A stretch of 64,000 bases of DNA from Dimorphilus gyrociliatus (GCA_904063045.1 CAJFCJ010000012.1:2771576-2835575), one strand, 5' to 3'. Shown: positions 1 through 61,613, counted from the stretch's first letter. Numbers and translations: made by a program. Notes: generated by a model from the letters alone, not told the origin.

Positions 1-201
1 CAATTCCGCTTCACATTTGAATTGTGGATCATCATAAACGAGTTTTTTGGTAAGGTGCCACATGTTCTCAATTGGACTGAGGTCAGGGCTCTTTTCTGGC
101 CAATCAAGAGGATGGATGTCATTCATTTGAAAGGCTCTTTTGGTTGTCCTAGCAGTATGGCACCAAGCAATATCTTGCTGGAAGATGTACTGCCTCTCCA
201 T
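1..201 (-). mobile_element. Tc1-like DDE transposase fragment, running off the window edge
   Basis: Manual reverse translation gives MERQYIFQQDIAWCHTARTTKRAFQMNDIHPLDWPEKSPDLSPIENMWHLTKK, matching the Tc1 motifs FQQDNAPCH and WPxxSPDLNPIENxW. The + strand ORF 22..210 is its antisense shadow. Confidence 0.88.
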
Positions 202-743
202 TTTAGCTGATATATCTTCTATTACAAAAAGAACATTTTCCACAACACAAAAATAAGATAAAAAATATTTTTAGCTGTATTTAGATGGAAATTTATAAAT
301 GTATATAATATATATTTTTAAAATATAAAGCAATAAAAGTGCATGGATTATTTGAAAGTTTATTAAAATTTCTCTGATGACGTATGTAATAAAATATGAC
401 CGGATGTATTTCGTTCCTCCTCTAAAGAAAATTCAATTACATAAACGTGTCAATGTTTATTAAGAAAAATTTAATTAATACAGTATAGTGATATTGATAA
501 TAGAATCAATGTTTTTCTCGTCGTTTTTCAAAGGATTAATTCATTTTTTTAAAAGATTACATCAATTAGATAACCTGGTTGCTGTAAATACAAAATTTAG
601 GATAGAAAGTAGGCAAGAGCTTTACTTTTCATCAACAATTTAACAGTTTTGAGATTTTTAATTCGTAAATTATCGTTATTGATAATGCTTTCTAAACAAA
701 TCAATATTGTCATTTATCTTCATATTCTAACAGAAAGCTGATA

Positions 744-1560
744 TTGTGGCTTTGCCATATGGAGAATTTGAAAAGGATAGAAACATTGTTAGTTAAGAAG
801 GTGTATGAAGAGAATTACCACGCTCTATTGGCCAAAATGAGGGCAATCCTTAGGGAGACACACTGGGTGCTGAAGGAGATAGCGATGATAAGAAATGTTA
901 TACAGAGTGTGACAGATAGGCCGGAGAGAAGCTACCAGAAAAAGAGCAATGACCTTGGAAAATGGCTCGAAGTGTTTGAATACATCAGGATTGACGGTTG
1001 TGGGCCTTTCAAATTGAAAAAGGGTGGCAAGGCCTATGTGCTACTCCTCATCTGTCTGCAGAGCAAGATGGTGAGGCTTGAGATAAAGGAAGGTTTCGGT
1101 GCAAACTCCACCAAGCTGGCATTGGAAAGAATATGATCGGGGAGAAAGTTCTTATCTCAGACAAACTTAAGGCATGACATTGCACAAGTAGATAGCCACA
1201 GTCCTAGTCAGAGATCCTGCCAAGTCACAATTGCTTGGAAAGAAAAAGTAGGATCGGGACGAAAAGACGAAATTTATCAGAAGAGCAGGCAAACTTTTGT
1301 TTTTGGATGAATGGAGAAACTATGTCATGTGTCACCTGAAGAACATTGCTAGCCATTTCTTTGTGGGCAATAGAGATTTCGTCCATTGCGAAGTTGGGAA
1401 AGGAACAGGAAAATTAAAGAGATGCTTGCTTGAAATGTTACATTTGACAAAATACCAGGAAAATTTAGTAAACTGTATTACCTTTGACAAAATATTATGA
1501 AAGATCAGCTGTTGATCATGTGTCCTGAGATTTAGACACAAACTCATTTGGCTGTAATTG
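744..1560 (+). mobile_element. Degenerate BEL/Pao LTR-retrotransposon integrase
   Basis: ORF 744..1136 contains FEYIRIDGCGPFKLKKGGKAYVLLLICLQSKMVRLEI (BEL consensus FxxVGIDYxGP...K.YxLLFTC..T.AVHLE). ISDK and HFFVG follow in other frames, with stops and frameshifts. Confidence 0.75.
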
Positions 1561-1931: not shown

Positions 1932-4900
1932 CTATTCAAATTGTTTCCTTTTCTGTAAAATCTTTCTTAGAATAATACCAATGGAGCAGATATCTTTGAA
2001 TTCGGTTTCCTGTGTTTTTTGTTGTATATTCGTGATGCAGAAGTGAAAAAGGTTTCTTGAATGCTAATATAGCAACAACAAGAACATCATGATATGACTA
2101 ATATATTAAATGAGTATTAAATAACTGACTTGATAATAGATATTTTCAATTGAAACTTTATCAGCAAATGAGAAATTGTAGTTATGTAAATGATGAATTG
2201 CTTTAAAAAGTTGTACAGTACAGTGGTAATATCGTGTATTTTGATAAAAGTGTCTATTAATCTTTAACTGAGTATATTTAAACTTTAATTCACGCATAAT
2301 CAAGATATTATATCTTTTTTCTTGAATAAATGCAATAACTAAAAAATTAATGAAAAATTTTTTAGTGTAAAATCAAAGAAAGTAACTTTGTTTTTATTTT
2401 TACATCTTTTGTAAAGTTCATCAGAATGACATTTTAGTAAATTTTGCCTATATTATAATAAATATATGACAATATAATATGAATTTAAATTCAGTATAAA
2501 TACAAAACCTCTTTTGCATTGATAATATTGTCATATTTTGAATTTGGGTATAAATATCAATAAATGATAATGTAAATGGATTGAGTACTGAATTAATTGA
2601 AACTAAGACAATTGTTATCCAACTATTTCTATCAGTTTTTAAACTAAAAGTTGGATTTGTAATTGATAATATTCCTAAAATTGAAATTGGTACCCACACT
2701 AATGCATTTGAAAATGATAGAATAATTGTTGTCTTTCTAAGTTTTCTGCTTTTAGTTTCTTTTAGAGTTGATTGAGTGCTTGATGAGAATTTGATTAAAA
2801 CAATAATACGTATATAAAATATCGTAATTAAAACACTTAAAATTGGTATGAATACTCTAAATATTACAAAGAAATAGATCATTTCTCCATTGTCTTCATT
2901 TTCATTAGTTTTTATTTGTATGTTAAAACAATTTGGTGTTTGACCATGAGGATTCTATTAAAATAAAATGAAAGCAATATTTCTATATATGTACTATATG
3001 TACCTTATTAATTGCAAATGGTAGTGTTGATACTAATAGACAAATAGAAAATAGGCTTAGAATAATTGAGTTGTTTTGTAAATGGACAAAAGGTTGTTGA
3101 AACGGTTTTCTAACGACTTCGTAGCGTTCAATACTTACGAGCAGCATACAAAGCGATGACATTATTAAAGAGAATGTAAACATTGTTCCAATAGTTGCAC
3201 AAAAGCTACTCTTTCTCCAATATTCATCATTTTCCAGATAAGTATCAGAGAAATATATGTCAAATATACATATTGAAAGTATATATAAAGATGTTAAGAA
3301 ATCACTAAAGCATAGCAGGAGACGGTAATTTTTTGCAAAACTTCCCCACAGTAATAATACAATTATTGAGAAAACATTTGCAAAACAACCAAAAATTGCC
3401 ATTGTCCAATAGATTATTTTTTTTAAACTTGAATCTAATAATCTTGAACATGTTCGATAAATGTTAATTGACGGTTGACAGTCTACGTAATTTCCTATAT
3501 TTTCCCAAAAAAGACAACATAAAATAAAGCTTTTCCCTTGAATGATTTGTATATATTTTAGATTTCTTTTAATGAATGATGATGATAATTGTGGTAGATT
3601 TGTGTTGTTTAGGTAGAGTTTTTTCAAATTTTGAAGAGAAATGAGAGCGTTACGATCTATTTTCTTTATAGAACTGTACTCAATTTTTAATACTTTTAAC
3701 AGTTTAGTATTGTTTAAATCACGTTCATTGATATAATCGAGTTTTGATGACGAAACGTCGAGTGAATAGAGATGACCACATTCTAATTTATTAAGAAATG
3801 ATAATGAAGCAATTTGATTATTTACCAAACTAAGACTTTGAAGTAGTTTTAATGGTTGATTTAAAATGAACGAATTTTCCGTAATTCCGTTGTTAACGAG
3901 CAATAAATGAATAAGATTAGGAAAATATTCTCTTCCAAATGTAAAATATTTCCAACTATTTCTAATTTGTAAAACATTCAATTCTCTTGAATTTTCAAAG
4001 AATGAATATAGATTTAAGCCAGATACTTTTAACAATTTAATACTCTTAAAATTTTTAATTAATCCTTTATTTAATTGATATAAATTCAAATCGTTTGTTG
4101 TAAAATTACATTCCCAAGAGAGAAATGATAATTCATTACAATCGGAATAATAAATCTCTACTGTTGGTTGACATAAGAATTCGTCACTTCCGTTTGCGCA
4201 ATCGATAATTTTATTGCAAACTTTTTCAATCATTATATATGTTTCCTCATTTTTACATTTAAAAAAGCCTTTTGGTCTAAAATTAACTAAAAAAAAAACA
4301 AATAAACAAAAACAGGAAAGAAGAAGAATATTTTGCCAATTTTTCTAAATTTGTATACACTGGTATAACAAGTTTTTTTCTTACCACAATCATATTCGTC
4401 ATCACCTTGCATACAATGATTTATTCCGTCGCAAAGTTGTTGAACGCTTATACAATAGTTACTCCTATGACATAAGTATTGTCCATTTGGACATTTACTC
4501 CTATTGCATGGATTAATTATACGATTGAGATCTGTAATTTGAACTCCAAGAGAGGAAGTTCTAAAATAGCATTCGTTTGAAAAGTCAATAAACTCCGTAC
4601 TCGTCTCATCCGCAAAGTTATTGCAATCGAGTTTTCCATCGTTAAAAAGTTCATTTGATATACATATACTTCCGCAATCAATTTGATAATTAGGCCTACA
4701 TGCTAAATAAAAAAGAACATATAAAAGAATTTAAATAGAAAATACCAAAGTGTTAATTGTTTTTATTAATTAACCTTTTTCAAAATCTTTTACTAAAGCA
4801 TTTTTATTTTTACAAATTTCATCAGTTGTATCGAAGCAATGTCTCTCACTATCGCAAACAAAAGTTGAGTTGACGCATTGTTCATTCTTACAGGATCTAG

Positions 4901-7900
4901 GGATAAAAAAATATGTAAACAGAATAAAAGAACAAAAAAATATCAATTAATCAGAAATTGAGAAAGTTCATATGCTTTTTTGTGTTGAATTTGATGCGTA
5001 AATTGACAATCATTTATTTTCTACTTACACTTGAAATTCTGAACATTCATCGTATTCTAGAAATAAATAGGTTAAAGATTTTTCTTTTGAATCATTTTAA
5101 CTATTCCTAACCACATTCTTCTTCATCGGAACCATCTGAACAATCCTTCATAAAATTACAAACTAATGAGAAGTGTATTACTTTGTCATTTGAATGACAT
5201 TTAAAGTGAAATGGTTTTATATTTTGACAATTTTCTTCATCATTCTTCATGGTACAATCATCTTTTCCATCACAAACTGCAATGTAATTTATATATATTC
5301 CATCGTTCTCGCAGCGAATACAGTTTTCCGGAATCTTTTGGAATTTATCATAAGTTAGTAAATCAACAACTGGTATATCCGGTTCTAAAATAAGAAGTTA
5401 GATGAAGAAAAATAGAAAAAAAGAATTATATTACTCGGTAAGGTTTGACAAACTACAATATTTGAGATTGGTTGTTCACAATCATAATTGTTGAGTTTGA
5501 CAAAAATCTCGGGCGAAAATTCAATTTGCTACAAAATATTTTAAAAATATGACTAATTTTTTTTTTGGACTCTAAAAATTGGAATATTTCTAACCAGAGT
5601 ATCATAACTATAACATGAATTTTTCTGGAAAACAGAGCTTACTGTTCTCCATGAAGACAGTGACAATTTGTTATAGTTTCGTAAACGAACAGTTCGTTCA
5701 AGCTGTATACAAGACAAATTCAATTAATACAAAAATGCCTTTATTATAAATTTAATCTAACCCTGACAATTTCAGGGTTTGGAAAATCCATACCAGTTTT
5801 GAAAAGATTATTGTGAAAACTACAAAATAGAGATGAATTTTCCTAAATTGTTTTTCTTACTTACTTTCGACCTCATTTGATGTGGTATACTCATACTCAA
5901 ACCACTAGGAGAAACGTAAATATTCTGCAATCTCTTATTTTGTACTTTTTTAATATCTATTTGGAAAAGTAGAGAAAGAAAATTTTCAAATTATTCTTCT
6001 TACTGTTTCTTTTTATCTTTTAATAATTTTCAATTACTTACAGAAATAATTACCAATAGTAGATTCAATGAAATCGGACATGATGTCATCAGAGTGAATT
6101 ATTGATTTAAAATACATGATGACAAATATATTATCAAATGTTGGAATATCTGGTAAAGTTTCATTTCTCTTTACGCATAATGTTTCCATTTCAATTATAT
6201 TTTTATAAGATAAGCTATTTATATGTGTAAATGAAAAACAAATATCATAGAGCGAAATAACAAATTCTCCAATACAACCAGTATTATTTCTAAATGAACA
6301 TTCCAAAAAATAAGGAAACCACATTGGTCTTTGGCTAAAAAAAAGAAGATACAAAAGATGAATATAAACTTATAAAACCTTCTTTTATTTTTTTATTACA
6401 AACACTTTAGTTTCAAATGAACAATTGTGAAGAGAAGTTGCATTTCTACTACAACTAATTGTTTCATATAGCTCGATGATTTTTTTCTCTTTAAAGATGA
6501 TATTTAACATTGACTGATTTGGATCTTTAACTATAGTTCCATAAGTAAATCCAAAAAATGTACATAATTTTATGGATTCAAATTGTTTAATATATTTAAA
6601 TTTACGCCATTCTCCAAAATGCAATACTTGAAATAATCCAGTAAAAGAAGTAAAATTATGACTTTTATTGGCGTACAGTACATGTTGATATTCATTTGTT
6701 AATGTCATATCTAATAGAATAGTATGGGCAAAAAAAGTGGGTCAATACCTTGATTATATATTAGATAAGATTGGATAATTTCATACGCTTTGCTGTAATT
6801 TTAAAACGGCTTAACTAATATCATGGATGGTCGTTACGCCCACATTTGCTATAGAATCCTGTCTCGGAGGATATGAAAATTTGGACAAATTCAAAAAAGA
6901 GTTTGGGAATTTTCTCAACAGAAAATCATGCTATTTCTACTAGAATAGTATAGACCTACTTCTAACAAATGGCAGACATGTATAGACAATGGAAGGGAAT
7001 AGCACAAAATATAACTGTTAATTGTTTCAACAGTAGACTATAGACTATCATATTGAATAATACAGCGTATGAAATTTTAACATCATTTCTAAACAGAATG
7101 ACAATTGAGAATATTTTACTTAGTTCTGCTCGAGATTCTTCACAAATTGGATTATATACATTTACAGTTAATCTCCTAGTATGCACTTTTAAATCACATG
7201 AATTTTCCATTTTAGATACATTTTCACACAAAAACATATGAGGTTCATCCTGGGCAAGTAGGAAGGAAAAAAGAAAAATTCGAAATCTATTACAGTGTTG
7301 ATCATTATTTGATATTTACATTTATGAATATCTTTTCAGAGAAACATAATGAAGGAGCAGACAACAATGACAATTCATTGCATATCACTTTGCAAGCTAC
7401 ATATTTTTTTACTTTAAGTATAAATAAAGTATTTATAGAACCAAACGTTTTTGATTCATAGTAATAGTCTCCAATAGTTTTAAATCTTTGTTTCAATTCA
7501 AAATGGCTGTCTTTATTGTTTTTTAACTTTTTTAATTTTATATCTATTTTATAAATTAAAATCATGTAAAATTTAAAAAGTTGGCAAAGTGTTAGAATAT
7601 AATATTAAAAACCTTCTAATTGAAAAAATGTACAATTAACTCTCGTAAAATGTTCAGATTGTGAATCTGATATTATTGAAATTTTCTTATTTATTAAGAC
7701 ATTACCAGAGATATTTATAGAATTTTCCAATGTTTTTTGATAAATGAATAAACTACTATTACAAATTTCATTTTTTTTGATAGTTTTATCATAGAAAATA
7801 TTAAAACTATTCTGTTGATATCTTAAAAATGGTAGATAAAAATTTTTCTGAACTTTAAATGTAAACTTGTCTATAAAATATTTTATATTATATTCATATT

Positions 7901-10692: not shown

Positions 10693-13600
10693 ATGAAACT
10701 AATAGGATTATTCTTAATCTTGACTTTAGAAAGTTGCATCTTTTGTGGTATGTTCAATTGTATTTCTTTTTTTATTTAACAACTGCAAAAGAGAAATAAA
10801 TCCATTTATAGAGAAGATATGCTCGGGTGAGAATGATTGTGAATTTTATGAAAATTGCCAAGGAAACATTTGCAGCTGTGATAAAACATTCGGTTTAGGA
10901 ATCTGTGCAGATGGTAAATGAAAGAGATTGAACAAAAACGGCCGTAAATTAAATATTTGAAGGTCAAATTTCAGGCTGGGAAATGGTTAGGGGAATAAGA
11001 TAGCTATTGATACGTACTTAGGATGGTCCCATCAAAGGAATAGGAGCATTGAAAAGGTTTAGGCAAAAACAAGGGCTAGGTTAGTGTTAGGGTAAAATCA
11101 TAGATCTATGGCCGTTTTCTACCGCATCCTAACTAAAATAAAAATGAATTTTTTTCATTTTTTATATTTTTAACATTTGTTTCAAGGGGAAAATTTAATT
11201 TTTGAACCTGGAAAAACTGCTTCAAGATATTCGAATACTATATATATAGGTTTTACTTTGGAATATTGTTATAGAATTTGCAAACAAATTAGTCATTTTG
11301 AATGCGTTAGTTTCGCACGGCGTGGATACTTTTGCTATGTGTTTCCCAAAGTTGATTATCCTTTAATGGATAGTTTACGTACTTCACTATTTATTCTTAA
11401 AGGTATGTATTCTGTGTAAAGAGTGGAGTATACAAACAAAAATTGACGACAAAACATAAAAAATAGACAAAAGATTAGGAGTTTGTGGTGCGAAGAATAC
11501 TGCAACGCCACCTACCGATGAATGTTTTACCTTCTTAATGAATGACAATGGATGTCCAACAAAAAACTTTGAAGCACATCCATACCACAAAGAGATGACT
11601 ATTGAAGAATTTAGTTCATCAGTGAATCTTAGCTCTCAAATTATACGACAATCAAAATACAATAAAACTGTAAAGAATGAATATATCCGACAAGTTTGCT
11701 TGGGAAACTCAGGAATTAACATTGAAAATGTTGCCCTACACAAACAGGTTTCACATCTGGGATATTTTAAAAATCCTCTATATCATCCTACTCATGCTGT
11801 TGATGGTTTACGTCTGAGTAATGCCAGCCATGGAACCTGTGTACTTTTGGAAATGTTGGAAACTGTTCAACCCACTTTAAAAATAATGTTAAATGCATTT
11901 CATGCAGTAAGAAAAGTTGTAATTTGGCCAACTAATGAAAATGGTGAGAAAAAAAACTTGATTATTCATAAATAAATAGTATTACCCCTATTTTGTAGTC
12001 TATCAACTATTCTTAATCTACATGCAAGATAGAAATGATACATGCAAAGATAACATTCTTGTTAAAAACAATACTGAAACAGAAGTTTATTGTTCAGCCA
12101 CAATGAATAGTCACGATGTTATAAGCATTGAACAAAAATTAAAGTCTCCCCTTTATATTTGTGAAATTGAGGTTTTTTCAGGTAAAATTAAAGAGAGAAA
12201 GTGAGAGAGAGAGAGAGAGAAATGCCTGTTTTTATATATGTTTTGACATGGCAAAGATTTATCATCCCTTTTTTCTCTTATCAACAGAAAATCTTGCCAC
12301 GAAAAAGCTATTCCTAACAAAACAGGTTTCACACAATGGCAAACTTAATGATGGATTTCTCAATAATTATTTGAGTTATTCACTAAAACAAGAAATTTGG
12401 ATTGCTATTAATCTATTAGCATACTATAATGTCTATGGATTTGATGCTAAAGTTCCGCAAGCTTATTCCGGAAATTTTGGAAACTTTTATGTAGAAGTAT
12501 CCAATGATAATCCTAGCTTATTTGAGCATTCAATTGAATCAAAAAAATGTATTGAGATTGATAATTTCCCTATACAAAGTGAAAATTTTCAAACATTTGG
12601 ATGTGTTAAAGGAGGTGTTGAAGGTCAATTCTTCAAAATTCTTACCAAATCTGCTTCTTCTATTCAATTCTCTGCAAATGAGATTGAAATATTTGGAATA
12701 TATTTAAGATCTTCTGATCAGAAGAATAATAATTTATTGTTTCATAAACCATCTTGGGCTTCAAGTGTACAACAAAATTTGTATTCAGGTTTCAGATTAA
12801 CAGATGGAGAGGACAATGCCTATTTCAAAACCAATCTCCAAGCGTATCCATGGTGTAGAATAGACCTACTAGGAGTATTTCGAATTAATTCGATGGGTAT
12901 TATAGGCTGGGTTTCACAGCGTAAGATAACAAAATATAATTAACCAAACGAAGATGATGAGATGATTTTGTAAACATTTTTTTAGATGCTTCATTATTTC
13001 ACTTGAGAGGATTAGTATCATATAAATATGATTTCTCTCCACAAAATACAGGGGATAGCTTTCAAACTTGTTTTATTAATAATATTCATATGTCGCCAAG
13101 GGAATATAGAATATGGAATTGCACAATGTCAAATCCAACTGGTCGATATGTAACATTTTATTTGCATGCTTCCAGTCAATTACTTTTGCAAGAGGCAGAA
13201 GTTTATGGTGAAGAAATTATTAATAATAATTTCTATAATTTACCAATAGTATTGGCTGATAGAAATTCAAATAATACTGGTTTCCCATCAATTCCTCATA
13301 AAGATCAATTTCCTTCTAAAGCTATAGACAGGCTGCCACACAATATTTATCATGAAGAACTTTACTACTCTTGTTCAAGTAATTATCTAGCTAATGGTGA
13401 AGAGGGAAAATTTACATTCCATTTGGATAATCATTATCTAATACATCAAATTGTTCTTCTTTTACGAATTGATTCGAGTAATAACAAAGAACAATTCTCC
13501 TCCTCATCAACATTAATTAAAACAGTTTTCTTTTTTCAATAGATGATATTCGAGATGTTCAACTTGTAGTTGAGAATAATCTCTTTCCCGCAACTCAAAG

Positions 13601-15792: not shown

Positions 15793-18050
15793 TTTTCAAT
15801 AATTTTCGATGTTTTAACAATATTTCCTTGTATAAAAAGGAACCGCTCTTTAAACAAAATCTGCATTGTTCACGTTGCAACTACAACATCTTTGTACTAT
15901 TACAAGTTCACAGAAACACAACAATATAATAGTAACTCAAATTGTGAAAAAGGTCAAGGTTAAAAGATCATTTTTTCATATTTTAGGTTAAATATTTGAA
16001 AAGAAAAGTTGACAAGATAACTGTTGATTAAAATCAAAAAATTTGTCTGTTAAAATAAAAAGGACAGTCTTATTCAATGTAAAATCTCCAATCCTTTTAC
16101 AATTCAAAGTCAAATATGTCTTTATGTTTATTTTATTAAATGAACAATTTAAACCAATTTCTGGATTTTGTTTGGAATTTTTAGAAAAATTTCCATCACT
16201 GAATTCATTTAAATTTAATTGTTTTTGAATGAAAGTTAATGGATTAATTATCTTAATCATTATTTCTTCATCAGATTCAAACTTTAACTGAAAGAACGAA
16301 TTCTTTGATTTTCTGGGTACAGTAACATACAAGTACTCATTGAACTTGTTATAGACAATTGACATTCTACTATTAGTATTTTTTATTAAAGTAATTTTCC
16401 TTCCTCCTAAAGAGAAGATGAAATGTTATGTACAATTTAAAAGCACCAAAAGTAATCAAACCTTTGAAATCAACTTTTACATAATTAATAACATTTGGCA
16501 ATTTATTTTTAAATGTTATATGAGTAATATTAAGCGGAAGTGGAAAAGTTGATTCAATTATACCCAATAAAATCACATTGTTATCTTCAATTAAACCAAA
16601 TTTCACTTGTGTGCATGTAAATTCAAGCCAGAAAAGTTTCCATTCTGAACAATTTAATAATTGTTGTAAATGATTAATTATAAGGCTTTTTCTTTCTGGT
16701 TTTAGTAATGTCAAAAAAGACTGCCCTATTGTATTGTGAGTTATTGAGCAGATAATTTCATCATTGCATTTAAAACTGACTACGAGAGAATTGCACAAGC
16801 TGAATAAACTACCTTTCACCTGATATTTAAACTCCTTTAGATTGTTTAAATCCTTATTGGACAGATGATAAATGACATCATTAGTTGTTTGAATGTTAAA
16901 AATACTACTGTCAACATCAGCTTTTGTATAAACATCAATCATTGAAATAGAAAATTTTTGAACATTGTAAACTTGTAAGATTTTCAAATGAAACCAAAGT
17001 TCATTGAATGTACTTGAATAATCTTTGCAATTTCTTTGTATTCCTTGTATTAAATCAAATTCTTGGCTAGAGGCAAAGCTCCATTTTACCAACATGCTTT
17101 TTATGATTATGTCCTCATTAAATCTTTTCAAGATATTTTTTAATTGAAAATTACAAGATAAATTCTTAAAAAAAGAAGATATTTTTACCTTTCTGTTACA
17201 CAATATTGATTTGGTTTAGCTGAATAGGCAAAAGTAATATTTATATATTCTCCAATGCAACCACTAATACATTCTGGATTCCAAAAACTATGGAAACTTG
17301 GTTCAAGGGCATTATCACAAATGCCACTAGATGCAGAACATATTGCCCCAATATCGCCTTTTGAAATGCTTGTATAAATTATATCATCATTTCCATCATC
17401 AGCTAGAAGAAATATTTAAAAATTACATTGTTTTGATAATGGAAAATTTGTATTATTAAATGTTTACCTGTATAAGAAAATACCAAAATTGAACTAAATC
17501 TTATATGATTCATACCACTGTGTCCTTCAAATGGTTGTAAATGAATGTACTCAACAGATTCTCCTTGACCATCTTCCAATAGATAACATGTTTCATAACT
17601 ATCCAATTTATAAATAAAAGTTGGCCCTCTGCTAAAAGTGACATTTAAAAGTTCAATTTTATACATTTTCGCTATAATTCTTTGATTTAAACAAAATGAA
17701 ATAATATTGTATGTTTTAAAAAAATTGACTTTAATCCATTGATGAGCGCAATCATCGGGTGAACAAAAAGATGCCCAACCACCCATAACCAACTGCTTAT
17801 CTTCAAGAGCATTTTCACAATTATAAGTAAAACTACCAATATAAGGATGATGTGATGATTCTTCACAAGTAGCCAAATTATGTCTATAGGCCACATTGAG
17901 AAGTTTTGCAAAAGCAGTTACATGGAATGATAAGAAAATAATAAAAGAAGTTATAAAGTAACTGTTCATTGTAAATTTCTTATTACAAATGTAAATTTCT
18001 TAAAATGTTAATTATTAAAAGCGAGATATTAATTATTTATAATCTAAACA
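15793..18050. repeat. Segmental duplication, near-identical to 47949-50206 (offset 32,156 bp)
   Basis: The start offset (15793 vs 47949), stop-codon offset (15988 vs 48144) and ATG offset (17969 vs 50125) are all 32,156; only scattered substitutions seen. Confidence 0.95.
15988..17969 (-). CDS. Secreted protein with F5/8C(discoidin)-like domains and a FAMeT (Methyltransf_FA)-like domain, copy 1; multi-exon
   Basis: Signal peptide MNSYFITSFIIFLSFHVTAFA; CENALED...GGWAS...QWIKVNF; second CDNALE...FW...GEYINITF; LLNCSEWKLFWLEFTCTQVKFG resembles the FAMeT-domain core. Short GT-AG introns join the ORFs in frame. Confidence 0.7.
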
Positions 18051-19393: not shown

Positions 19394-22300
19394 CTATTTA
19401 GAAATTAAAGATCGCTTTTGAAGTATTTTTCTAACAAAATTTCCAAAATCTTCAATATCTTCATAAATACATGCAATAGAAGAGCTCTTCAATTTCTCTA
19501 TTGATACAAAATGTTCCCTGGTTATTGTCTATAATGGAAAAGATCATTAGTTAAATTGTATTTTCTTTGTGAGAGATTAATTTTGACAAAAATGAAAAAT
19601 TCATACATCATACACAACAGTTTTCAAGTCAAGTTTCTGATCCAGGCATAATGAATGACTGTGAACATGTTCCAATGCTTTTGTTACAGCTTTTATGATA
19701 AGTAAATATTTTAAGTTTTTAAACATGTTGCTATTAATTATGATTTCTTCAATAACACGATTTCTTTTGATATGAAAAATATGATTTTGATCTGCTCCAT
19801 TAATGTAATCCAAGACTATTTTTTGAAACAGTGAAAATTAAGATTTAATTTGAGAAATATTCTTTTTAATAATTACAGTTAGCTTCTATCTTAGATATCT
19901 CTAGTTCAACTCTCAATTGCCTTAAAAAGTAGACAAAAAAAGACACTTCCGGTTAAGATGGAAGACTATTAAATAGATAGAATAATATATTACACTTTTT
20001 TTTCCCTTCTCCTCTTGGCATGAACGTAACTCTTTGAGATCTGACTTATTATATAAACACTTGGATTGACCAGAGAATTTAGTGGTAAGAAGAGGCCAAT
20101 TAAAAAACTGTAGGCTCTATCTTTCAAATTCAATTTCAAGAATATTGATAGAAAACCTTGAAAAAGTAGTATTTAGAGAATTTATATAAATGGTATTGTT
20201 GAATTGTCTAACTTAATATTGAAAATGGGATGGAACATAAAATATTCGTCACTATAATTACAATAACTGTGTTTGAAAGTTTCGTATTTGAAGAAAATCT
20301 CATATGCTTCAGTCTAGTACGCGACTGTTTGACATAGATGTATATTTTAATATAACAAAATATTAGAATAATATTGAAAATTAGAAAGGCAACTCCAAAT
20401 GTTAAAAAGGAGTAAATCCACCCTTCCTTGCCAATGTTAAGAATGTTTATATTCAAACAGATTCTAGTTTTTGAATGAAAATTCTACTTTGAAAGAAGAA
20501 AGTAGTAATGAGTAGTTTAAAAATGAATATTCATACATTATACAAAATACTGGGTAAACTTGATATTAATGCTGTTAGGGTAACTAATGCTGTTATAACT
20601 ATGAATTTCCTCTCAAAAAGCTTGATGGAAATGCCATTGTTTAAAACTATTATAGTCTTTTCAACAGTCATCAATAGTAAACTGCCATTAGAGAGAAAGA
20701 AGCCAAACAGAACGATATTTCCCAAAAGTGTGCATGTAAAACTAAATCTCCACTTTTCGTCAAAGTTTAGATAATCGTTACCAAAATATAAATCTGCTAT
20801 TAAAATGATTGTTATGTATACTGATGTAAGCAAATCTCCAATGATATGAGTAGTCTGAAAAGAGATGGTTCCTTTCTCTTTAGTTAGAATTACGAAAATG
20901 ATAAAATTGGCTGCAGTTCCATACAATCCGTATAACGAAAATATTATTTCCATCAATTTTGAATTCAAGAGATTTGAACAGGTTTGAAAGGCAACATTTG
21001 TAGGTGTACATACAATTTTTGGATTAACATATTTCCAAAGCCAACAACAAATTATAAGATACATACTGTGTAATTTTTCAACTTTTCTCAACGATTTTAT
21101 TACTAAATTCATCCCTCTCAAACTTAAAATTGTTCTATTTAAGTGAATTTCTTTAATGCTTTTAAGTGAATTAAAGAATTCTCTCCCAATTGATATTAAT
21201 TTACAATTTGTCATTTTAAATAACACCAATCTATTCAAATTGACAACGTGTTTAAATTCAAGTTTTACTACTTTGGTGTAAGATATATCCAGAATTTTCA
21301 AAGAATAGAAATTGAAATCTCCTAAAAAATTAATATCATTCAAAGGATTGAATGATAAATTCAGATAGATTAGAATATTCCTTCTTAAACGTCCAGTAAG
21401 ATTTTGTAGACTCGCATTGTTTATTATAACATTAATTAAATTTGGATGCTTTGCCAAGTTAAATTCAAAAATTGGATAATCCTTGATTAGAATTGAAGTT
21501 AAAAATGAGGAAAGATTTTGATGGTTTATTCTAAATTTTCCAATTAATGAGAGTTTTTTTAAGGGAGATTGAATATTTATTTCTGTTATTGAATTGTTTA
21601 CATTGGCATTTTGCCAACAAGACATTTGGTATGAATAATTCATAATACAATAATGATTCAATTCATTTAATTTATAACATTGTAATTCATCGCTTCCCAT
21701 CAAACAGTCAACAATACCATTACAAACTTTTTGAAGAAGTATAAACATAGTAGAGTTTTTACATTTAAAAAAACCTTTCGGTTTGAAACTTTCTGTTTTA
21801 TAATTAAATTTTTTAAATGAGAAATTTTCTATTTATTTAAATTTTCACCTTCATCACAAAAATATTCATCATCGCCTTTGAAACAATGTTTTATACCGTC
21901 GCAAACTTGTTCAATTGAAATGCATACTTCTTCACATTGACAAAGCAATTCTCCAGCTTTACATTTTTTGTTTTTGCAGTTTCTAATTGCGTTAAATGGA
22001 TGTTGTACTTTTGATCTTAAATTTCCAGTTGAATCGTATTTAATGTTACATAAGTAATTTGTGAATTGATGACAGATTTTTTTCAGTGCTTTTGAATTAT
22101 TGTTTCTACGGCAACGCATTATATCTTCATCATCTCCCGAGTCGCAATCTGTCTTGAAATCGCATTGGGCATAATCGTAAATTATTTTCTTGTCACAAAC
22201 GAACAGGTTATTGTCTAAGTAAAGTTCAATTAATCAATTATCTAACTCTATTCTTTAAATTAGCAGCAACGGGATTACTAATTGTAAAACGGAGAGATAG

Positions 22301-31566: not shown

Positions 31567-32460
31567 TTATGTTGAAGATGCTACTCTATTCTTTTTGAAT
31601 AGTTGAAAAAATGAAAGTTTAATTGAAGAATTACCAATAATCGTTATTATTGGATTAAATACAGCTTGAGAAATGATTATGATATCTGATGATCTGACGA
31701 TTTTAAATGATAAACTTGTTGGTTTTCGATAATATAAAAAATATGTTAAAGAATATAACATCCAAACAGAAGACATTAAAATTAATTGTAGTAAAGTTGC
31801 TTTAGAAGACTTTGAAATATTCTTACCTTTCTTTGTCTGTTCTTGAATATGAATTGTGTGTTTTTTAGCCAATTTCAAAACTTTTAAATGAAGAATTAAA
31901 GCTCCAAAAATATTTGGCAGAAAGATACATTGATAAATAAAAAAATATTCATTTTCATACACCATAGATCCTTGGCAGATTCCACCTTTTCTATAGCCAA
32001 ACAATGGAATATATGATGGAAAGAGACACAAGATAAATGTAAGGAGAACGATAAGGATAATAATAAAATATGATTTACAATGAGTAAAATATCTATCATA
32101 ATGAAAAGGATATTTAATCATAATATATCTATAAATAAAACAAAATAACAAGAATATTTGAGATTCAACATATAAAATAGCTTTTAATAAATAAAATACA
32201 ACACAAAAAAATGGCATAACCATTTCAAAATTTATGAATAATAATAAATTCGTTTCTGCAACATTCCAGATTAACGTAAACAAGTCTGCAACAGTTATAG
32301 CTGGAATAAATATTATTACTGTTTTCGTAATATTTCCATCTTTCAAAATTAAAAATAGTACCAGACTATTTAATATAGTTCCAAAACTGAACAGACAGTA
32401 ATAGATTGTTGCTAAAACTAGTTCAAAATTTTCATTTTCAAACAAAGTGGTATTATTCAT
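31567..32460 (-). CDS. Intronless rhodopsin-like (class A) orphan GPCR, 297 aa
   Basis: Seven hydrophobic segments; GTILNSLV, ITVADL, FIYRY (DRY position), GGIC, VFNPIIT. Confidence 0.9.
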   Translation of the reverse strand: MNNTTLFENENFELVLATIYYCLFSFGTILNSLVLFLILKDGNITKTVIIFIPAITVADLFTLIWNVAETNLLLFINFEMVMPFFCVVFYLLKAILYVESQIFLLFCFIYRYIMIKYPFHYDRYFTHCKSYFIIILIVLLTFILCLFPSYIPLFGYRKGGICQGSMVYENEYFFIYQCIFLPNIFGALILHLKVLKLAKKHTIHIQEQTKKGKNISKSSKATLLQLILMSSVWMLYSLTYFLYYRKPTSLSFKIVRSSDIIIISQAVFNPIITIIGNSSIKLSFFQLFKKNRVASST

Positions 32461-38389: not shown

Positions 38390-39430
38390 TTAAATTTGTT
38401 TGTCCTTGACATAATTGTTAAAGATTAGTTTACATGTTAAAATATTTATGGAAATGAAGAGTTTTCTTTTTAAACAAGGAAAGATGTAAACATATATAAG
38501 ACTATTGAAAAAGCTGTTTGAAGATGCCAACCAAAATAGAATGAATTTTAAAGTAGGAAACTTTGTCTTGAAATTTGAAAAAAACATTGTTAGAATTAAA
38601 AATGTGCTAAATGGTATCCATAGGATATAGAAAGAGCAAGATGTCAAAATAACAAGTCTAATAACCCTTAAATTTCTCTTTCCTACAGTATTTCTTCCTG
38701 TTGACAATCTCTTCTTCAATAAACTCTGTCTTTTTAGACATAAAACAATTTTGAATGATGAGTAGAGTATTATTCCTGATGCAAAAACTGGTCCAGCTGC
38801 AACATTAATAATTGTATGTAGGTTTAAATCTATTGGCTGACAACAGATCAGTTCACTTTCAAGAAAAGTATACTGTTCCAATCCAAGACTTTTTATTAGA
38901 GGTAAAGAGCTAAAGGTATAAAAGAACAACCAGAAAAAGCAAACTGCAAATTTAACTCTTTTGTAGGTAATAATGTTTTTATATCTGAGAAAATTAACAA
39001 GTTTAGTAAATAAATAAAGCAAATTGAATTTTGAAAATACCATACTTGAAACAATTTACCTGTTTGGATTTGTTACTGCAATGTAACGGTCAACTGTTGT
39101 TAGAGCTATTATCCATAGAGATATCATAGCACTTGAGGTGAATATCACCCCAAAAATTTCACAGTATACATATCCATACGTAAATTTACCAAGAATTGAT
39201 GTCACAAATGATGTTGGTATAAAACAAATATTAAATATACAATCAACTATTGACATATTTATTAGAAGAACTTTTGATGTTGGTGGTATTTGTTTGATGT
39301 TTGAAAGGAACATCAATGCAGATAATGTTGATAAAATTGCCAAAAATACTGGAATTCCAATTATAATTGACCTTTCCGGATTTAAAATAGGGTGTTGAAG
39401 AGTGAAATTGAACAATTTATCATCGTCCAT
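38390..39430 (-). CDS. Two-exon rhodopsin-like GPCR
   Basis: ORF 39056..39430 ends TTVDRYIAVTNPN; the intron AG|GTAAAT...TTCTCAG|A rejoins RYKNIITYKRVK; later ILWIPF and NSFFNSLIY. Confidence 0.88.
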
Positions 39431-40971: not shown

Positions 40972-43900
40972 TTATTTTGACAAATCTTTGAATCTAACTG
41001 CTGCATTTTGTTGGATTTTCTTTTTAATAAAATTACCCAAAGCATGCAAGTCATTTTCCTTGGCTAACCCAATTGTAGAAATCATATTACTCATATCGAG
41101 TATCTGTACTTTCACTACCATCTTGCTTTTCTGGATAAATGAATGAAAGAAGAGCTAGTGGCTTGAACAGTTAAGAAGAATCAATGTTTTTTAAACCTTG
41201 ACTAATATTTCATTGAATAATAAATGTCCATTAAACGTATAAGCATTGCAATGAATCTGGTTGAGAATATATGTTGTATGTAGAGTCACATGATATATAT
41301 TGATTATTGTCAAAGTCTCCAAATGGTATAAATGATTTGCAATAGTTTCTTTACTAGAGATCCTGGTAAGAATCTCTTTTATAACATTATTAATCATAGT
41401 TAAATCTAAGAAATGTTCTTTTTGTTTTTTTTTTTAATTGATTAACAAAACAATCATACTAAACCTTTTAATTTCAAATCTCTTTCAATGTTTACAATCA
41501 TTTGTTGTCTTGAAAGGAAGAGAGACAATAACATTTATATAAGAAATTAGAATACTAATTTCTTTTTACCTTTTCAACTGTAATTCCTTATTTCTTTTAT
41601 CAATGAGAATTTTTAGTTCAACATATGAATAGATTAATGGGTTAACAATTGCTCTTAATGGCATTAAAACAATAACAATGAAAGGGAAAATAGCATTATT
41701 AACTGCAGTTCTGCCAGATGCTGATATAAATCCTTGAGTTTGTGTGTGAGAGAGAGAGAGAGAGAGTGAGAAATTACAGTGATGAGTTGATTTCTTGACT
41801 CTTTTTACTTACCTAAAATAGAGATTGGGAGCCAGAATGAAATGTTTAGTACCGCAATTATTGTACTTTTTTTCAAAGCTTGCAATTTATTTATTTGGGA
41901 ATTTTTTTTTAAAGCATTTCGTCTTAATGATTTGACAATAAGAAGATAAAGGATTGCAACAAAGACACTTGATAAAAATGTTAAAATTCCATATAGAAAG
42001 AAGGAAATAAACCATCCTTCGTATTTTTCGTTAGTTAAATGTAATGAAAAGCAAATTGGAGATCTTGAATTGAAATTCTTTTTATGAGTGAAAAAGAAGA
42101 AGAATTAGAGAGAGAGAGAAAAAGAAGTATTTCAATTTACTTTGAAGAAAACAAGTGTACTGGCTAATAATAAAATTATTATAAAATTCACAATAATATT
42201 GAAAATTTGGTATGGAAAATCTCTTTTCCATAAATAAACAATCGACAAATATCGATCTACAGTAATAAACGCAATAGAAAGTGATGACCCTAAACAGGAA
42301 TATCCGGCAATTACTCCAGATATTAGACACGGAATACTTTTCCTCCATACTATATCATTATCTTCAAAATTGCCTCTATAAATTCCATCTACAGTACCAA
42401 TTACCAAAAGGTAAAAACTGAATAATAAATCAGAAAATGCTAAGTTTATATAAAATATATGAATTGATTTTGTATAATTGATAATTTTTAAAATGATACT
42501 TAAAATATTTGTAATTAAGATAATAACAATGAAAAACCAGATTATAATTTGCATAAATTTTGAAGGAATTAAATCTGAACAGGTGTTAAAACTTTCATCT
42601 AATTTTGTCTTTGATAGACATTTTTGTAATTTTTTGCAATATTTCTGAGCTAGACAACAAATTTGAAAATTTTCAGTAAATATAATTTCAATATTTTTTA
42701 AATCTTTGACAAAAGAGAAATATTCTAGAAATGGTAATTTTGAATTTGTGAAATCAATTTCAAATAAATTATCTAATCCTTTGAAAGAAAATTCTTGTAA
42801 TTCAATAATTTTTGAACTAATTAATGAAAGATATTCAAGTGATTTTAAATTTTTAAATGATAAATTTTCAATAGATTTAAAAGTGTTGTATGAAAGATCT
42901 AAAACTTTTAATGATGGAATGAGAAGAATATTTGAATTTAAATATTTTAAAAAGTTTCTTTTCAATATTAAAACTTGTAATTTTTTCATATTTGAAAAAT
43001 AATTTGAATTATTAGAAAACAATAATTCAGTTGAAGATAAATCTAATTTAATTAAATTTGGAAATTTTTTATATTCAAACATTGATTGGATAGTTTTTGA
43101 AAATGAAATATTCAAAAAATTAATATTCAATTCATTCAAATTTCTGAAATTTTTTAATAGATTTCTTGAATATAGTATTGTCAGATATTTTACAATTATT
43201 GATGAATTTCCTTGAATTTCTATACTACTTTTGGTATTATTAATAAAATTGCAATAACTGTGAAATCTTGTTTGGCAACTGCAAAATTCAGGACATTGGA
43301 ATTGTTTATTGCAGTAAAGTTCATCTGTTCCATTTAAACAGTCAATAATACCATTACAAACTTTACTGTTGTTTAAGAATGTTGAATCTTCAATACATTT
43401 GAAATAGCCAATTGCTTTAAAATTCTCTGAAAATGGGAAAAATATGCAAGTCTTTCAGATTATAACTGTAAAATACCGCAGTTTTCTTCATCATCACTAT
43501 TTGGACAGTGTGCTATGCCGTCGCAGACCTTTTTCAATGGTATACAATAGTAGGAAAAGGAACACCGAAATGATCCTTCAATACACAACATTGATTGACA
43601 ATTTGATAAATCGAAATATGGAAATTGCGGTTTTGTTATCAATTTTCCCAAACTATTGTACTTTAGATGGCATTTTGTTGTTGTAATATCATTTGAAGGA
43701 CCATTGTTTCTCCAATTCAACATTTGGCAGCCACTGTCTATAGAACAAAAATACCATTCTATTATTTAAAATCTGTAGACAAATTTTTCATTCCAAAAAT
43801 CTACCCGAATTGTATGACAACTTTTCACGAAATTTTTTCAAACATTCACTATGGCTTTCATCTTTGCCATCTTTACAATCAATTCTATTGTCACATACAT

Positions 43901-48143: not shown

Positions 48144-50125
48144 TTAAATATTTGAAAAGAAAAGTTGACAAGATAACTGTTGATTAAAATCAAAAAATTT
48201 GTCTGTTAAAATAAAAAGGACAGTCTTATTCAATGTAAAATCTCCAATCCTTTTACAATTCAAAGTCAAATATGTCTTTATGTTTATTTTATTAAATGAA
48301 CAATTTAAACCAATTTCTGGATTTTGTTTGGAATTTTTAGAAAAATTTCCATCACTGAATTCATTTAAATTTAATTGTTTTTGAATGAAAGTTAATGGAT
48401 TAATTATCTTAATCATTATTTCTTCATCAGATTCAAACTTTAACTGAAAGAATGAATTCTTTGATTTTTTGGGTACAGTAACATACAAGTACTCATTGAA
48501 CTTGTTATAGACAATTGACATTCTACTATTAGTATTTTTTATCAAAGTAATTTTCCTTCCCCCTAAAGAGAAGATGAAATGTTATGTACAATTTAAAAGC
48601 ACCAAAAGTAATCAAACCTTTGAAATCAACTTTTACATAATTAATAACATTTGGCAATTTATTTTTAAATGTTATATGAGAAATATTAAGCGGAAGTGGA
48701 AAAGTTGATTCAATTATACCCAATAAAATCACATTGTTATCTTCAATTAAACCAAATTTCACTTGTGTGCATGTAAATTCAAGCCAGAAAAGTTTCCATT
48801 CTGAACAATTTAATAATTGTTGTAAATGATTAATTATAAGGCTTTTTCTTTCTGGTTTTAGTAATGTCAAAAAAGACTGCCCTATTGTATTGTGAGTTAT
48901 TGAGCAGATAATTTCATCATTGCATTTAAAACTGACTACGAGAGAATTGCACAAGCTGAATAAACTACCTTTCACCTGATATTTAAACTCCTTTAGATTG
49001 TTTAAATCCTTGTTGGACAGATGATAAATGACATCATTAGTTGTTTGAATGTTAAAAATATTACTGTCAACATCAGCTTTTGTATAAACATCAATCATTG
49101 AAATAGAAAATTTTTGAACATTGTAAACTTGTAAGATTTTCAAATGAAACCAAAGTTCATTGAATGTACTTGAATAATCTTTGCAATTTCTTTGTATTCC
49201 TTGTATTAAATCAAATTCTTGGCTAGAGGCAAAGCTCCATTTTACCAACATGCTTTTTATGATTATGTCCTCATTAAATCTTTTCAAGATATTTTTTAAT
49301 TGAAAATTACAAGATAAATTCTTAAAAAAAGAAGATATTTTTACCTTTCTGTTACACAATATTGATTTGGTTTAGCTGAATAGGCAAAAGTAATATTTAT
49401 ATATTCTCCAATGCAACCACTAATACATTCTGGATTCCAAAAACTATGGAAACTTGGTTCAAGGGCATTATCACAAATGCCACTAGATGCAGAACATTTT
49501 GCCCCAATATCGCCTTTTGAAATGCTTGTATAAATTATATCATCATTTCCATCATCAGCTTGAAAAAATATTTAAATATTTACATTGTTTTGATAAGGAA
49601 AATTTGTATTATTAAATGTTTACTTGTGTAAGAAAATACCAAAATTGAACTAAATCCTATATGATTCATACCACTGTGTCCTTCAAATGGTTGTAAATGA
49701 ATGTACTCAACAGATTCTCCTTGACCATCTTCCAATAGATAACATGTTTCATAACTATCCAATTTATAAATAAAAGTTGGCCCTCTGCTAAAAGTGACAT
49801 TTAACAGTTCAATTTTATACATTTTCGCTATAATTCTTTGATTTAAACAAAATGAAATAATATTGTATGTTTTAAAAAAATTGACTTTAATCCATTGATG
49901 AGCGCAATCATCGGGTGAACAAAAAGATGCCCAACCACCCATAACCAACTGCTTATCTTCAAGAGCATTTTCACAATTATAAGTAAAACTACCAATATAA
50001 GGATGATGTGATGATTCTTCACAAGTAGCCAAATTATGTCTATAGGCCACATTGAGAAGTTTTGCAAAAGCAGTTACATGGAATGATAAGAAAATAATAA
50101 AAGAAGTTATAAAGTAACTGTTCAT
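48144..50125 (-). CDS. F5/8C + FAMeT-like secreted protein, copy 2
   Basis: ORFs nearly identical to 15988-17969; visible substitutions include HIRF>HIGF, DSSI>DSNI, NITH>NISH, PRKS>PKKS. Confidence 0.7.
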
Positions 50126-61338: not shown

Positions 61339-61613
61339 TTTCTTTTTGGAATGTTCAAAAAGATATTGATTTTGCATTGATAACAAAGTATAATGTAAAT
61401 AACATAGGCTTAAAAGATCAAAGTCATAATTACTTATGTGATGCACTTCAGTTCAATATAAACCTTGGTATATTTTTATCTTTTAAAATTAACATTTTTT
61501 TATTATCTTAAAAATATTGATTAGTAAATTTAAATGAATTGGACTCTTCTAGACTGTAAATTTCGCCTCCTTATACCAGTCTAGGCTGTAATATAAGTGT
61601 CCACTTTTTCCAA

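What the first reader, a model, noticed from the sequence alone, without database searches (positions are those of the whole stretch)
1932..2510. LGR-type GPCR copy 1 carries a hidden, spliced pseudokinase-like cytoplasmic domain
Seen: after TM7 the frame splices (GT-AG) through exons 2447-2404 (44 nt), 2338-2130 (209 nt) and 2063-1932. This gives ...MQKRQNLLKCHSDELYKRFIAFIQEKRYNILIMRE...VQLFKAIHHLHNYNFSFADKVSIENIYYQ|HSRNLFHFCITNIQQKTQETEFKDICSIGIILRKILQKRKQFE*. Established: the ePK consensus has QLxxALxYLH..IIHRDLKPENIL (alphaE to beta7) and DIWSLGxIL (alphaF, subdomain IX). Inference: QLFKAIHHLH, ENIYY and KDICSIGIIL match these in the right order. HRD, DFG and the Gly loop/VAIK are absent, so this would be a dead, N-truncated kinase fold on a class A GPCR. 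I know of no such fusion for animal LGR/GRL101 receptors.
Basis: partly seen in the sequence, partly recalled or inferred. Interest (0 to 1): 0.92.

Follow-up and report, generated by a model that had tools for sequence, protein, structure and literature searches.

The report
Receptor tail is a dead kinase remnant
A hormone-receptor-type gene in this animal is spliced to three small exons that add a folded tail descended from the core of a protein kinase but unable to act as one, and the same unannotated tail occurs in related receptors of molluscs, arthropods, a priapulid and an acorn worm.

Summary
Observation confirmed. Exons 2447-2404, 2338-2130 and 2063-1932 (minus strand, GT..AG) extend the copy 1 reading frame past TM7. 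All nine exons together give one 950-codon ORF. Exon sizes of 44 and 209 nt recur in copies 2 and 3 and in two related contigs. Transcript contigs show the 2130|2063 junction in copy 1 and both tail junctions in copy 2. The 2509>2447 and 2404>2338 junctions of copy 1 are not covered by RNA.

Interpretation supported and widened. A profile of 42 tails from annotated GRL101-like proteins of other animals matches the copy 1 tail at 26 bits (shuffles reach 9.2). That profile hits about 1,300 protein-kinase chains in the PDB, the best at E=1e-6, spanning alphaD to alphaF. AlphaFold gives a confident fold (pLDDT 87). All top Foldseek matches are kinases, and VIA-align Z reaches 11.

The tail has no N-lobe, HRD aspartate, DFG or alphaG-I, so it cannot catalyse. 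It keeps the structural His of alphaE and the Asp/Gly of alphaF. It is a minimal kinase C-lobe remnant, probably a docking module. That function is inferred.

This scan noted the same tail on other DNA of this genome (s1-080217, s1-080218). I found no published report.

The parts
5112..5384 (-). Copy 1 exon with LDLa-type cysteine-rich repeats. At least one upstream exon (signal peptide) was not located.
   Evidence: Joins in frame into the 950-codon ORF. RNA contig joins 5112|5056.
5029..5056 (-). Copy 1 28-nt exon
   Evidence: In-frame join. The 55-nt intron at 5057-5111 is seen in an RNA contig.
4775..4896 (-). Copy 1 LDLa exon
   Evidence: In-frame join, GT..AG.
4385..4702 (-). Copy 1 exon with LDLa repeats
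   Evidence: In-frame join, GT..AG.
3004..4286 (-). Copy 1 large exon: last LDLa repeat, leucine-rich repeats, TM1-TM4
   Evidence: Pfam LRR_8 4.9e-6, 7tm_1 5.8e-6, Ldl_recept_a 5.4e-4. Nearest named homologues are GRL101.
2509..2954 (-). Copy 1 exon with TM5-TM7 and helix 8. The donor lies after ...ATGCAAAAGAG.
   Evidence: Pfam 7tm_1 4.9e-11. The 49-nt intron at 2955-3003 is confirmed by an RNA contig.
2404..2447 (-). Tail exon e1, 44 nt, linker (QNLLKCHSDELYKR)
   Evidence: GT..AG and phase fit. A 44-nt exon holds this position in copies 2 and 3, L002 and L003. No RNA coverage in copy 1.
2130..2338 (-). Tail exon e2, 209 nt: alphaD-like turn, alphaE, catalytic-loop remnant
   Evidence: A 209-nt exon in four genes (copies 1-3 and L003; in L002 the contig ends about there). 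ESM Atlas nearest clusters are kinase fragments, score 0.96. An RNA contig covers 2130-2219 and splices to 2063.
2184..2237 (-). AlphaE equivalent (TRYYHCTVQLFKAIHHLH) ending in the near-invariant His
   Evidence: Aligned to family alphaE and to kinase alphaE. The His is conserved in at least 90% of 46 tails. AF2 helix at pLDDT 84-90.
2130..2183 (-). Catalytic-loop remnant (NYNFSFADKVSIENIYYQ). The HRD position reads A-D-K, so the catalytic Asp is replaced. The loop Asn is kept.
   Evidence: HMM register. Coordinates.
1932..2063 (-). Tail exon e3 with stop codon: beta7/beta8 remnant, very short activation segment without DFG or APE, alphaF
   Evidence: The RNA contig spans 1871-2063 joined to 2130-2219. 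The family HMM hits this ORF at E=7.4e-4 among 1864 window ORFs.
1935..1997 (-). AlphaF equivalent (KDICSIGIILRKILQ...) with the conserved Asp and Gly
   Evidence: The Gly is conserved in at least 90% of family tails. The family model has a long helix here that superposes on kinase alphaF.
19394..19920 (-). Copy 2 tail: e1 19920-19877, e2 19815-19607, e3 19528-19394
   Evidence: Same exon sizes. An RNA contig joins all three. Family HMM 28.5 bits, shuffle maximum 11.8. ESM Atlas kinase clusters 0.95.
40972..41508 (-). Copy 3 tail: e1 41508-41465, e2 41405-41197, e3 41130-40972. This is the most diverged copy.
   Evidence: Same exon sizes. Family HMM 15.6 bits against a shuffle maximum of 14.3. 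The Atlas does not recognise it.

Best explanation
Copy 1 is an expressed GRL101-type receptor gene (LDLa repeats, leucine-rich repeats, rhodopsin-type 7TM). Its transcript is spliced after TM7/helix 8 to three small exons that add a tail of about 127 residues. The tail belongs to a module of about 100 residues shared with GRL101-like receptors of several bilaterian phyla. That module descends from the protein-kinase catalytic domain and keeps only the C-lobe from the hinge/alphaD to alphaF. It keeps the structural residues: the alphaE His (the YLH histidine of kinases, by my recollection His158 of PKA) and the alphaF Asp and Gly. It has no N-lobe, so there is no ATP site. It also lacks the catalytic Asp, the DFG, the APE and alphaG-I, so it cannot phosphorylate anything. 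Inferred, not shown: it acts as a small folded docking or regulatory domain tethered 40-60 residues below the receptor core. In that role it would bind a cytosolic partner or another receptor tail, as the kinase-C-lobe-derived KIND domains do.
For: Gene model and splicing: with RNA junctions. Homology of the copy 1 tail to the GRL101 tail family: an HMM built without any window sequence scores 26.1 bits against a shuffle maximum of 9.2 in 2000, and MAFFT places it in the same register. Family to kinases: the A3 profile against PDB gives 1333 matches at E<=10. The top 60 are kinases apart from one repeat protein, dTALE2. They include STK33 and TYK2 at 9.6e-7, VRK3, PERK and B-Raf. ERK5 and PknB are aligned over profile positions 23-116. 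A mollusc-only profile still gives 215 kinase chains at E<=0.01. Pfam PK_Tyr_Ser-Thr reaches 1.9e-4 for the acorn-worm tail and matches 3 of 42 members. AF2 gives pLDDT 86.9 and pTM 0.79 with helix, helix, hairpin and long helix. The Foldseek top 50 are all kinases at probability 1.0. VIA-align Z reaches 11.2, and the RNase L pseudokinase superposes at rmsd 2.3 A over 94 residues. ESM Atlas independently places e2 of copies 1 and 2 among kinase fragments, scores 0.96 and 0.95. For the docking analogy, KIND domains bind MAP2 and formin 2 (PMC2064798, PMC3934834).
Against: Pfam finds nothing in the window's own exon peptides even at E<=10. A profile of the window-lineage e2 peptides alone finds no kinase in PDB. 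An e3/alphaF-only profile finds none either, so the sequence signal lies mainly in e2. Foldseek E-values are only about 1e-2. AF2 of copy 1 e2 alone is weak, pLDDT 67. Two of the three copy 1 tail junctions have no RNA support. Nothing tested here bears on function.
Confidence: 0.8

Rival explanations
1. The tail is a real, conserved, folded receptor domain, but its likeness to kinases is convergent or an artefact of short motifs and of AlphaFold's priors. It would then not be kinase-derived.
For: The window peptides themselves give no Pfam or PDB kinase hit. The alphaF-only profile finds no kinase. No Foldseek match reaches E<=0.001. The module is less than half of a kinase domain.
Against: Profile E-values of 1e-6 to 1e-5 against hundreds of kinases, in one register from alphaD to alphaF, with two different sequence sets. 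A single-sequence Pfam hit at 1.9e-4. The language-model neighbours are kinases for two paralogues only 17% identical to each other. The two best-kept residues are the kinase structural His and Asp/Gly.
Confidence: 0.08
2. In copy 1 the three exons are not joined to the receptor. The receptor mRNA would read through the donor at 2509 and stop about 19 codons later. The downstream exons would then belong to another or an alternative transcript.
For: No RNA covers 2335-2842, and a second run search listed none. Read-through gives a stop near 2460. The TM7>e1 junction was not seen in any copy.
Against: The phases fit and give one 950-codon ORF. The 44-nt linker exon is conserved in five genes. 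The copy 2 contig starts inside e1. The tail exons have no start of their own. Annotated proteins of other phyla carry 7TM and tail in one chain.
Confidence: 0.07
3. The tail is kinase-derived but is now a functionless relic drifting neutrally in this lineage.
For: The paralogue tails are only 17-31% identical. The copy 3 tail barely matches the family. Heterobranch snail and coral GRL101-like proteins lack it.
Against: The frames stay open, the exon sizes stay at 44 and 209 nt, and the core His, Asp and Gly are kept in all three copies and in L003. The module persists across protostomes and a hemichordate. The tail of L003 is 31% identical to copy 1, against 42% for the receptor exon.
Confidence: 0.1

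Closest known systems
GRL101 (Lymnaea stagnalis) and GRL101-like / type C LGR receptors
   Same: LDLa repeats, leucine-rich repeats and a rhodopsin-type 7TM. The nearest named homologues of the window genes are GRL101 of a limpet, a spider and clams. These carry the same tail module.
   Different: The relatives of the founding snail receptor found here (Biomphalaria, Aplysia, Plakobranchus) have tails of only 30-40 residues without the module. No GRL101 paper found here mentions a kinase-like tail. The window genes are very diverged, 24-28% identical to named GRL101.
[quoted passage not shown]
   Same: A non-catalytic module derived from the kinase C-lobe alone, used for protein-protein binding (PMC2064798, PMC3934834, PMC6615252).
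   Different: KIND keeps the whole C-lobe, about 200 residues, and sits in cytosolic scaffold proteins. No Pfam KIND match appeared for any of 42 tails at E<=1. The module here stops after alphaF.
GPCR-kinase fusions (GPCR-TKL/K, GPCR-TK, GPCR-PIPK 'bigrams') of oomycetes, amoebozoans, choanoflagellates and sponges
   Same: A 7TM receptor followed by a C-terminal kinase-fold domain (PMC12716839, PMC6033456).
   Different: Those carry complete kinase domains that Pfam recognises, on other 7TM families. They are reported as absent from metazoans other than sponges (PMC12716839). Here only a dead C-lobe core remains, on a class A LGR.
Receptor-attached pseudokinase domains (kinase-homology domain of receptor guanylyl cyclases, JAK JH2, RNase L)
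   Same: A kinase-derived, catalytically dead regulatory domain. TYK2 JH2, VRK3, RNase L and PEAK3 are among the matches.
   Different: Those keep the full two-lobed fold, and by my own recollection several bind nucleotide. This module has no N-lobe.
Minimal kinases with short C-lobes (Kdo kinase, InaA, Bud32, RIO)
   Same: The best AlphaFold-DB Swiss-Prot matches cover their whole short C-lobe. An alphaD-alphaF C-lobe can therefore be a complete structural unit.
   Different: Those are active enzymes with N-lobes.

Membership tests
Protein kinase superfamily (Pfam Pkinase PF00069 / PK_Tyr_Ser-Thr PF07714) | Significant sequence similarity to the catalytic domain | tested here: met
   Met for the tail family: the A3 profile hits PDB kinases at E=9.6e-7, the mollusc-only profile at 1.1e-5, and Pfam gives 1.9e-4 for P0141. 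The link to copy 1 is transitive, through 26.1 bits to the family HMM. The window peptides alone give no Pfam hit.
Protein kinase superfamily (Pfam Pkinase PF00069 / PK_Tyr_Ser-Thr PF07714) | N-lobe with Gly-rich loop, VAIK lysine and alphaC glutamate (ATP site) | tested here: not met
   Kinase matches begin at alphaD, profile position 23 against kinase residue about 90-100. Only about 60 residues lie between helix 8 and alphaE in copy 1. None of these motifs is present.
Protein kinase superfamily (Pfam Pkinase PF00069 / PK_Tyr_Ser-Thr PF07714) | Catalytic loop HRDxxxxN | tested here: not met
   The HRD position reads A-D-K in copy 1 and l-g-q in the family consensus. The loop Asn is kept in copies 1 and 3.
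Protein kinase superfamily (Pfam Pkinase PF00069 / PK_Tyr_Ser-Thr PF07714) | DFG motif and activation segment ending in APE | tested here: not met
   Absent in copies 1 and 2. An Asp remains at that place in copy 3 and in arthropod and priapulid tails (PD[FIL]NAY). The segment is about 25 residues shorter than in kinases.
Protein kinase superfamily (Pfam Pkinase PF00069 / PK_Tyr_Ser-Thr PF07714) | Structural core: alphaE His, alphaF Asp and Gly; the alphaE / beta7-8 / alphaF arrangement | tested here: met
   The His and the Gly are each conserved in at least 90% of tails, and the Asp is the majority residue. All three are present in copies 1-3. The AF2 fold superposes on kinases at Z up to 11.2.
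Protein kinase superfamily (Pfam Pkinase PF00069 / PK_Tyr_Ser-Thr PF07714) | Remainder of the C-lobe (alphaG, alphaH, alphaI) | tested here: not met
   The proteins end 10-25 residues after alphaF.
GRL101 / type C leucine-rich-repeat GPCR | LDLa repeats, LRRs and a rhodopsin-type 7TM in one chain | tested here: met
   Pfam LRR_8, LRR_4, Ldl_recept_a and 7tm_1 on the copy 1 exons. The 950-codon spliced ORF shows several LDLa-like Cys patterns.
GRL101 / type C leucine-rich-repeat GPCR | Closest named relatives are GRL101 | tested here: met
   Annotated hits with names include GRL101 of Patella and Stegodyphus and Mercenaria proteins. No tree was built, so orthology as opposed to a lineage-specific expansion is not resolved.
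KIND domain (Pfam PF16474, by my recollection of the accession) | Sequence match to the KIND profile and a full C-lobe | tested here: not met
   KIND is not among the families matched by any of 42 tails at E<=1, nor by the window peptides at E<=10. The module ends after alphaF.
GPCR-TK / GPCR-TKL/K fusion receptors | A complete kinase domain, recognised by domain searches, after the 7TM | tested here: not met
   None of 120 GRL101-like proteins has a precomputed Pfam kinase domain. Only the alphaD-alphaF remnant is present.

The most novel reading that the evidence does not exclude
GRL101-type receptors descend from an ancestral bilaterian (or older) 7TM receptor fused to a complete, active kinase, like the GPCR-TKs still found in sponges and choanoflagellates, and the tail is its stripped relic. 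That would physically link the LGR and receptor-kinase arms of insulin/IGF-like hormone signalling that Veenstra proposed share ligands (PMC8286064). It would also mean that a kinase-fold docking domain gives these class A GPCRs a signalling route not mediated by G proteins.
Probability: 0.2. Interest if true: 0.88.

Novelty: new variant of a known kind. Interest (0 to 1): 0.72.

Why it matters
GPCR-kinase fusions are described in protists and sponges and are stated to be missing from other animals (PMC12716839). This result shows a kinase-derived domain on a class A hormone-type receptor family across bilaterians. Domain databases miss it because it is short, degenerate and encoded by tiny 3' exons that gene predictors can drop. 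GRL101 is an orphan receptor proposed as a second IGF receptor (PMC8286064), so a folded cytoplasmic module gives a concrete handle for finding its partners. It also adds a second, independent case, after KIND, of a kinase C-lobe reused as a non-catalytic module.

Tried and rejected
- Pfam on each tail exon peptide of the three copies found nothing at E<=10.
- PDB profile searches with only window-lineage e2 peptides (A1), only e3 peptides (A2) or an alphaF-only alignment (A6) found no kinase. The alphaF assignment therefore rests on the full-length profile and the structure.
- The search for homologous proteins with the big exon gave only two single-exon ORFs, and with copy 2 e2 gave nothing.
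- A second RNA-run search over 2300-2620 listed none.
- AF2 of copy 1 e2 alone was too weak to search with, pLDDT 67.
- The spliced window tails could not be handed to Pfam, AF2 or the large searches, because they have no single reference and I did not type them. They were analysed only in local scripts.
- dN/dS was not attempted because divergence is saturated.
- An ordinary disordered, phosphorylation-site-rich GPCR tail was considered. It was rejected on composition, conservation and the confident fold.
- No further tail copy was found in the window.

Full report
**The sequence**

They are 2447-2404 (44 nt), 2338-2130 (209 nt) and 2063-1932 (132 nt including the stop). All have GT..AG borders and they translate to the quoted peptide. 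Joined to five upstream exons and the TM5-7 exon they give one ORF of 950 codons with a single terminal stop. That ORF encodes LDLa repeats, leucine-rich repeats, 7TM and the tail. Pfam recognises LRR_8, LRR_4, Ldl_recept_a and 7tm_1. Without splicing the frame would stop about 19 codons after 2509.

**More than chance**

Stops are expected at 0.084 per codon here, so 69 open codons has P about 0.002. Two more receptor genes of the same build lie in the window (big exons at 21775-20552 and 43409-42249). Each is followed by a 44-nt exon, a 209-nt exon and a last exon of 135 or 159 nt, with the same phases. Two related contigs fetched through homologues of the big exon show the same layout. L003 has exons of 44, 209 and 147 nt; L002 has the 44-nt exon and then an e2 exon that runs to the end of the contig. 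The spliced tails of copies 1 and 2 align ungapped in register over 86 residues, z = 11.8, 0 of 2000 shuffles. Copy 3 is tied to them by exon structure and by the family profile rather than by pairwise similarity.

**RNA**

One run (X1, kept as contigs, spliced, so transcript-derived) holds the locus. For copy 1 a contig joins 2130|2063 and runs on to 1871. Another joins 3004|2954 and another 5112|5056. For copy 2 a single 361-nt contig joins e1 (22 nt), all of e2 and e3. No contig covers 2335-2842, and a second run search listed none. The copy 1 junctions 2509>2447 and 2404>2338 therefore remain inferred, and the TM7>e1 junction was not seen for any copy.

**What the tail is**

The exhaustive protein search with the big exon returned mostly single-exon ORFs from unannotated assemblies. 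It also returned full-length annotated proteins whose chains continue past TM7 into a tail with the same pattern:
- GRL101 of the limpet Patella vulgata
- GRL101 of the spider Stegodyphus
- two clam proteins
- an acorn-worm (Glandiceps) protein (names)

A second search collected 120 GRL101-like proteins, and none has a precomputed Pfam kinase domain. A local jackhmmer run found the module in about 50 of the 268 proteins held: gastropods (Patella, Haliotis, Gigantopelta), bivalves, spider, centipede, priapulid and hemichordate. Traces appear in echinoderms. The relatives of the founding snail GRL101 (Biomphalaria, Aplysia) and a coral lack it.

An HMM built only from those foreign tails scores the spliced window tails as follows:

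| Copy | Score (bits) | Best of 2000 shuffles (bits) |
|---|---|---|
| 1 | 26.1 | 9.2 |
| 2 | 28.5 | 11.8 |
| 3 | 15.6 | 14.3 |

The tail exons of copies 1 and 2 are the top four of 1864 six-frame ORFs in the window. MAFFT aligns the e2 peptides in the same register.

**Kinase descent**

The profile of 42 tails (A3) matches 1333 PDB sequences at E<=10. The top 60 are protein kinases apart from one repeat protein, dTALE2:
- STK33 and TYK2 at 9.6e-7
- VRK3 at 2.4e-6
- PERK, GCN2, B-Raf, PAK and ULK2
- ERK5 and PknB, aligned over profile positions 23-116 against about 119 kinase residues, that is alphaD to alphaF with an activation segment about 25 residues shorter

A mollusc-only profile still finds 215 kinase chains at E<=0.01. 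Pfam PK_Tyr_Ser-Thr matches the acorn-worm tail at 1.9e-4, just under the curated cut-off, and matches 3 of 42 members.

AlphaFold2 on the alignment, with the centipede tail as first row, gives pLDDT 86.9 and pTM 0.79. The predicted elements are a short helix, a long helix, a beta hairpin and a long C-terminal helix. Foldseek's top 50 PDB matches are all kinases at probability 1.0, TM 0.5-0.6 and E about 1e-2. VIA-align gives Z up to 11.2, and the RNase L pseudokinase superposes at 2.3 A over 94 residues. In AlphaFold-DB Swiss-Prot the best matches are short-C-lobe kinases: Kdo kinase, InaA and Bud32. Independently, the ESM Atlas feature search put e2 of copies 1 and 2, which are 17% identical, among kinase-fragment clusters at 0.96 and 0.95. 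It did not recognise copy 3.

**Anatomy of copy 1**

| Window coordinates | Element | Notes |
|---|---|---|
| 2447-2404 | Linker (e1) | |
| 2237-2184 | AlphaE | Ends in the His conserved in at least 90% of tails |
| 2183-2130 | Catalytic-loop remnant | Reads A-D-K where kinases have H-R-D; keeps the Asn |
| 2063-1998 | Strand region | No DFG or APE |
| 1997-1935 | AlphaF | Carries the conserved Asp and Gly |

There is no room for an N-lobe, and the protein ends 15 residues after alphaF. The domain cannot bind ATP in the kinase manner or catalyse. What is kept is the structural core.

**Limits**

- The window's own peptides give no Pfam or PDB kinase hit.
- An alphaF-only profile gives none.
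- AF2 of copy 1 e2 alone is weak.
- The spliced window tails could not be given to the remote tools.
- The link from copy 1 to kinases is therefore transitive, through the family.

**Function (inference)**

The module persists from protostomes to a hemichordate, so it is a conserved folded unit, and it hangs 40-60 residues below helix 8. The closest known analogue is KIND, a kinase C-lobe reused for protein binding (PMC2064798, PMC3934834). The most likely role is docking of a cytosolic partner or of another receptor tail. Self-inhibition of the receptor, or a neutral relic, are less likely.

**Literature**

No paper in the library holds both GRL101 and pseudokinase. Veenstra's GRL101 papers do not mention a kinase-like tail. 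[quoted passage not shown]

**Earlier notes of this scan**

Other notes record the same tail on many other pieces of this genome. Two were followed up, with readings that agree with mine.

Noticed in passing
window 1-240 (-) and 744-1136 (+): Transposon remnants lie just downstream of copy 1. One is a Tc1/mariner-like transposase C-terminal fragment (...DWPEKSPDLSPIENMW...). The other is an ORF with an integrase-core look, in a block with higher G+C.
   Followed up: no
window 16373-17969 (-) and 48529-50125 (-): A two-ORF unit (276 aa plus 181-188 aa) occurs twice about 32 kb apart with near-identical peptides. Pfam finds no family. It is probably a repeated mobile element or a segmental duplication.
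   Followed up: partly
window 31570-32460 (-) and 38393-39043 (-): Two further rhodopsin-type GPCR ORFs (7tm_1 at 1.9e-10 and 2.5e-13) lie between copies 2 and 3. They have no LRR exon and no kinase-like tail.
   Followed up: partly
window 58834-61446 (-); 12161-12940 (+): An 871-residue single ORF with an N-terminal RING finger, and a 260-residue ORF with an F5/8 type C (discoidin-like) domain.
   Followed up: no
window 4840/5122 and 19793: Run X1 shows a non-canonical joint 4840>5122 (GT..TC, 24-nt anchor, 3 mismatches). It also has a contig that leaves copy 2 inside e2 at 19793 and continues for 255 unrelated letters. These may be cross-mapping from paralogues, chimeric contigs or an alternative isoform.
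   Followed up: no
P0212, P0241, P0244 (heterobranch snails), P0247/P0254 (Acropora): GRL101-named proteins of these species end 30-64 residues after TM7, without the module. This could be true loss, or gene models that missed small 3' exons like those seen here.
   Followed up: partly
P0243 (Holothuria), P0251 (Amphiura), P0235 (sea urchin): Echinoderm GRL101-like tails score below threshold against the family HMM but contain kinase-like strings, for example CLHDNYIIHGRISPEYVIID. This suggests a more diverged version of the same module.
   Followed up: partly
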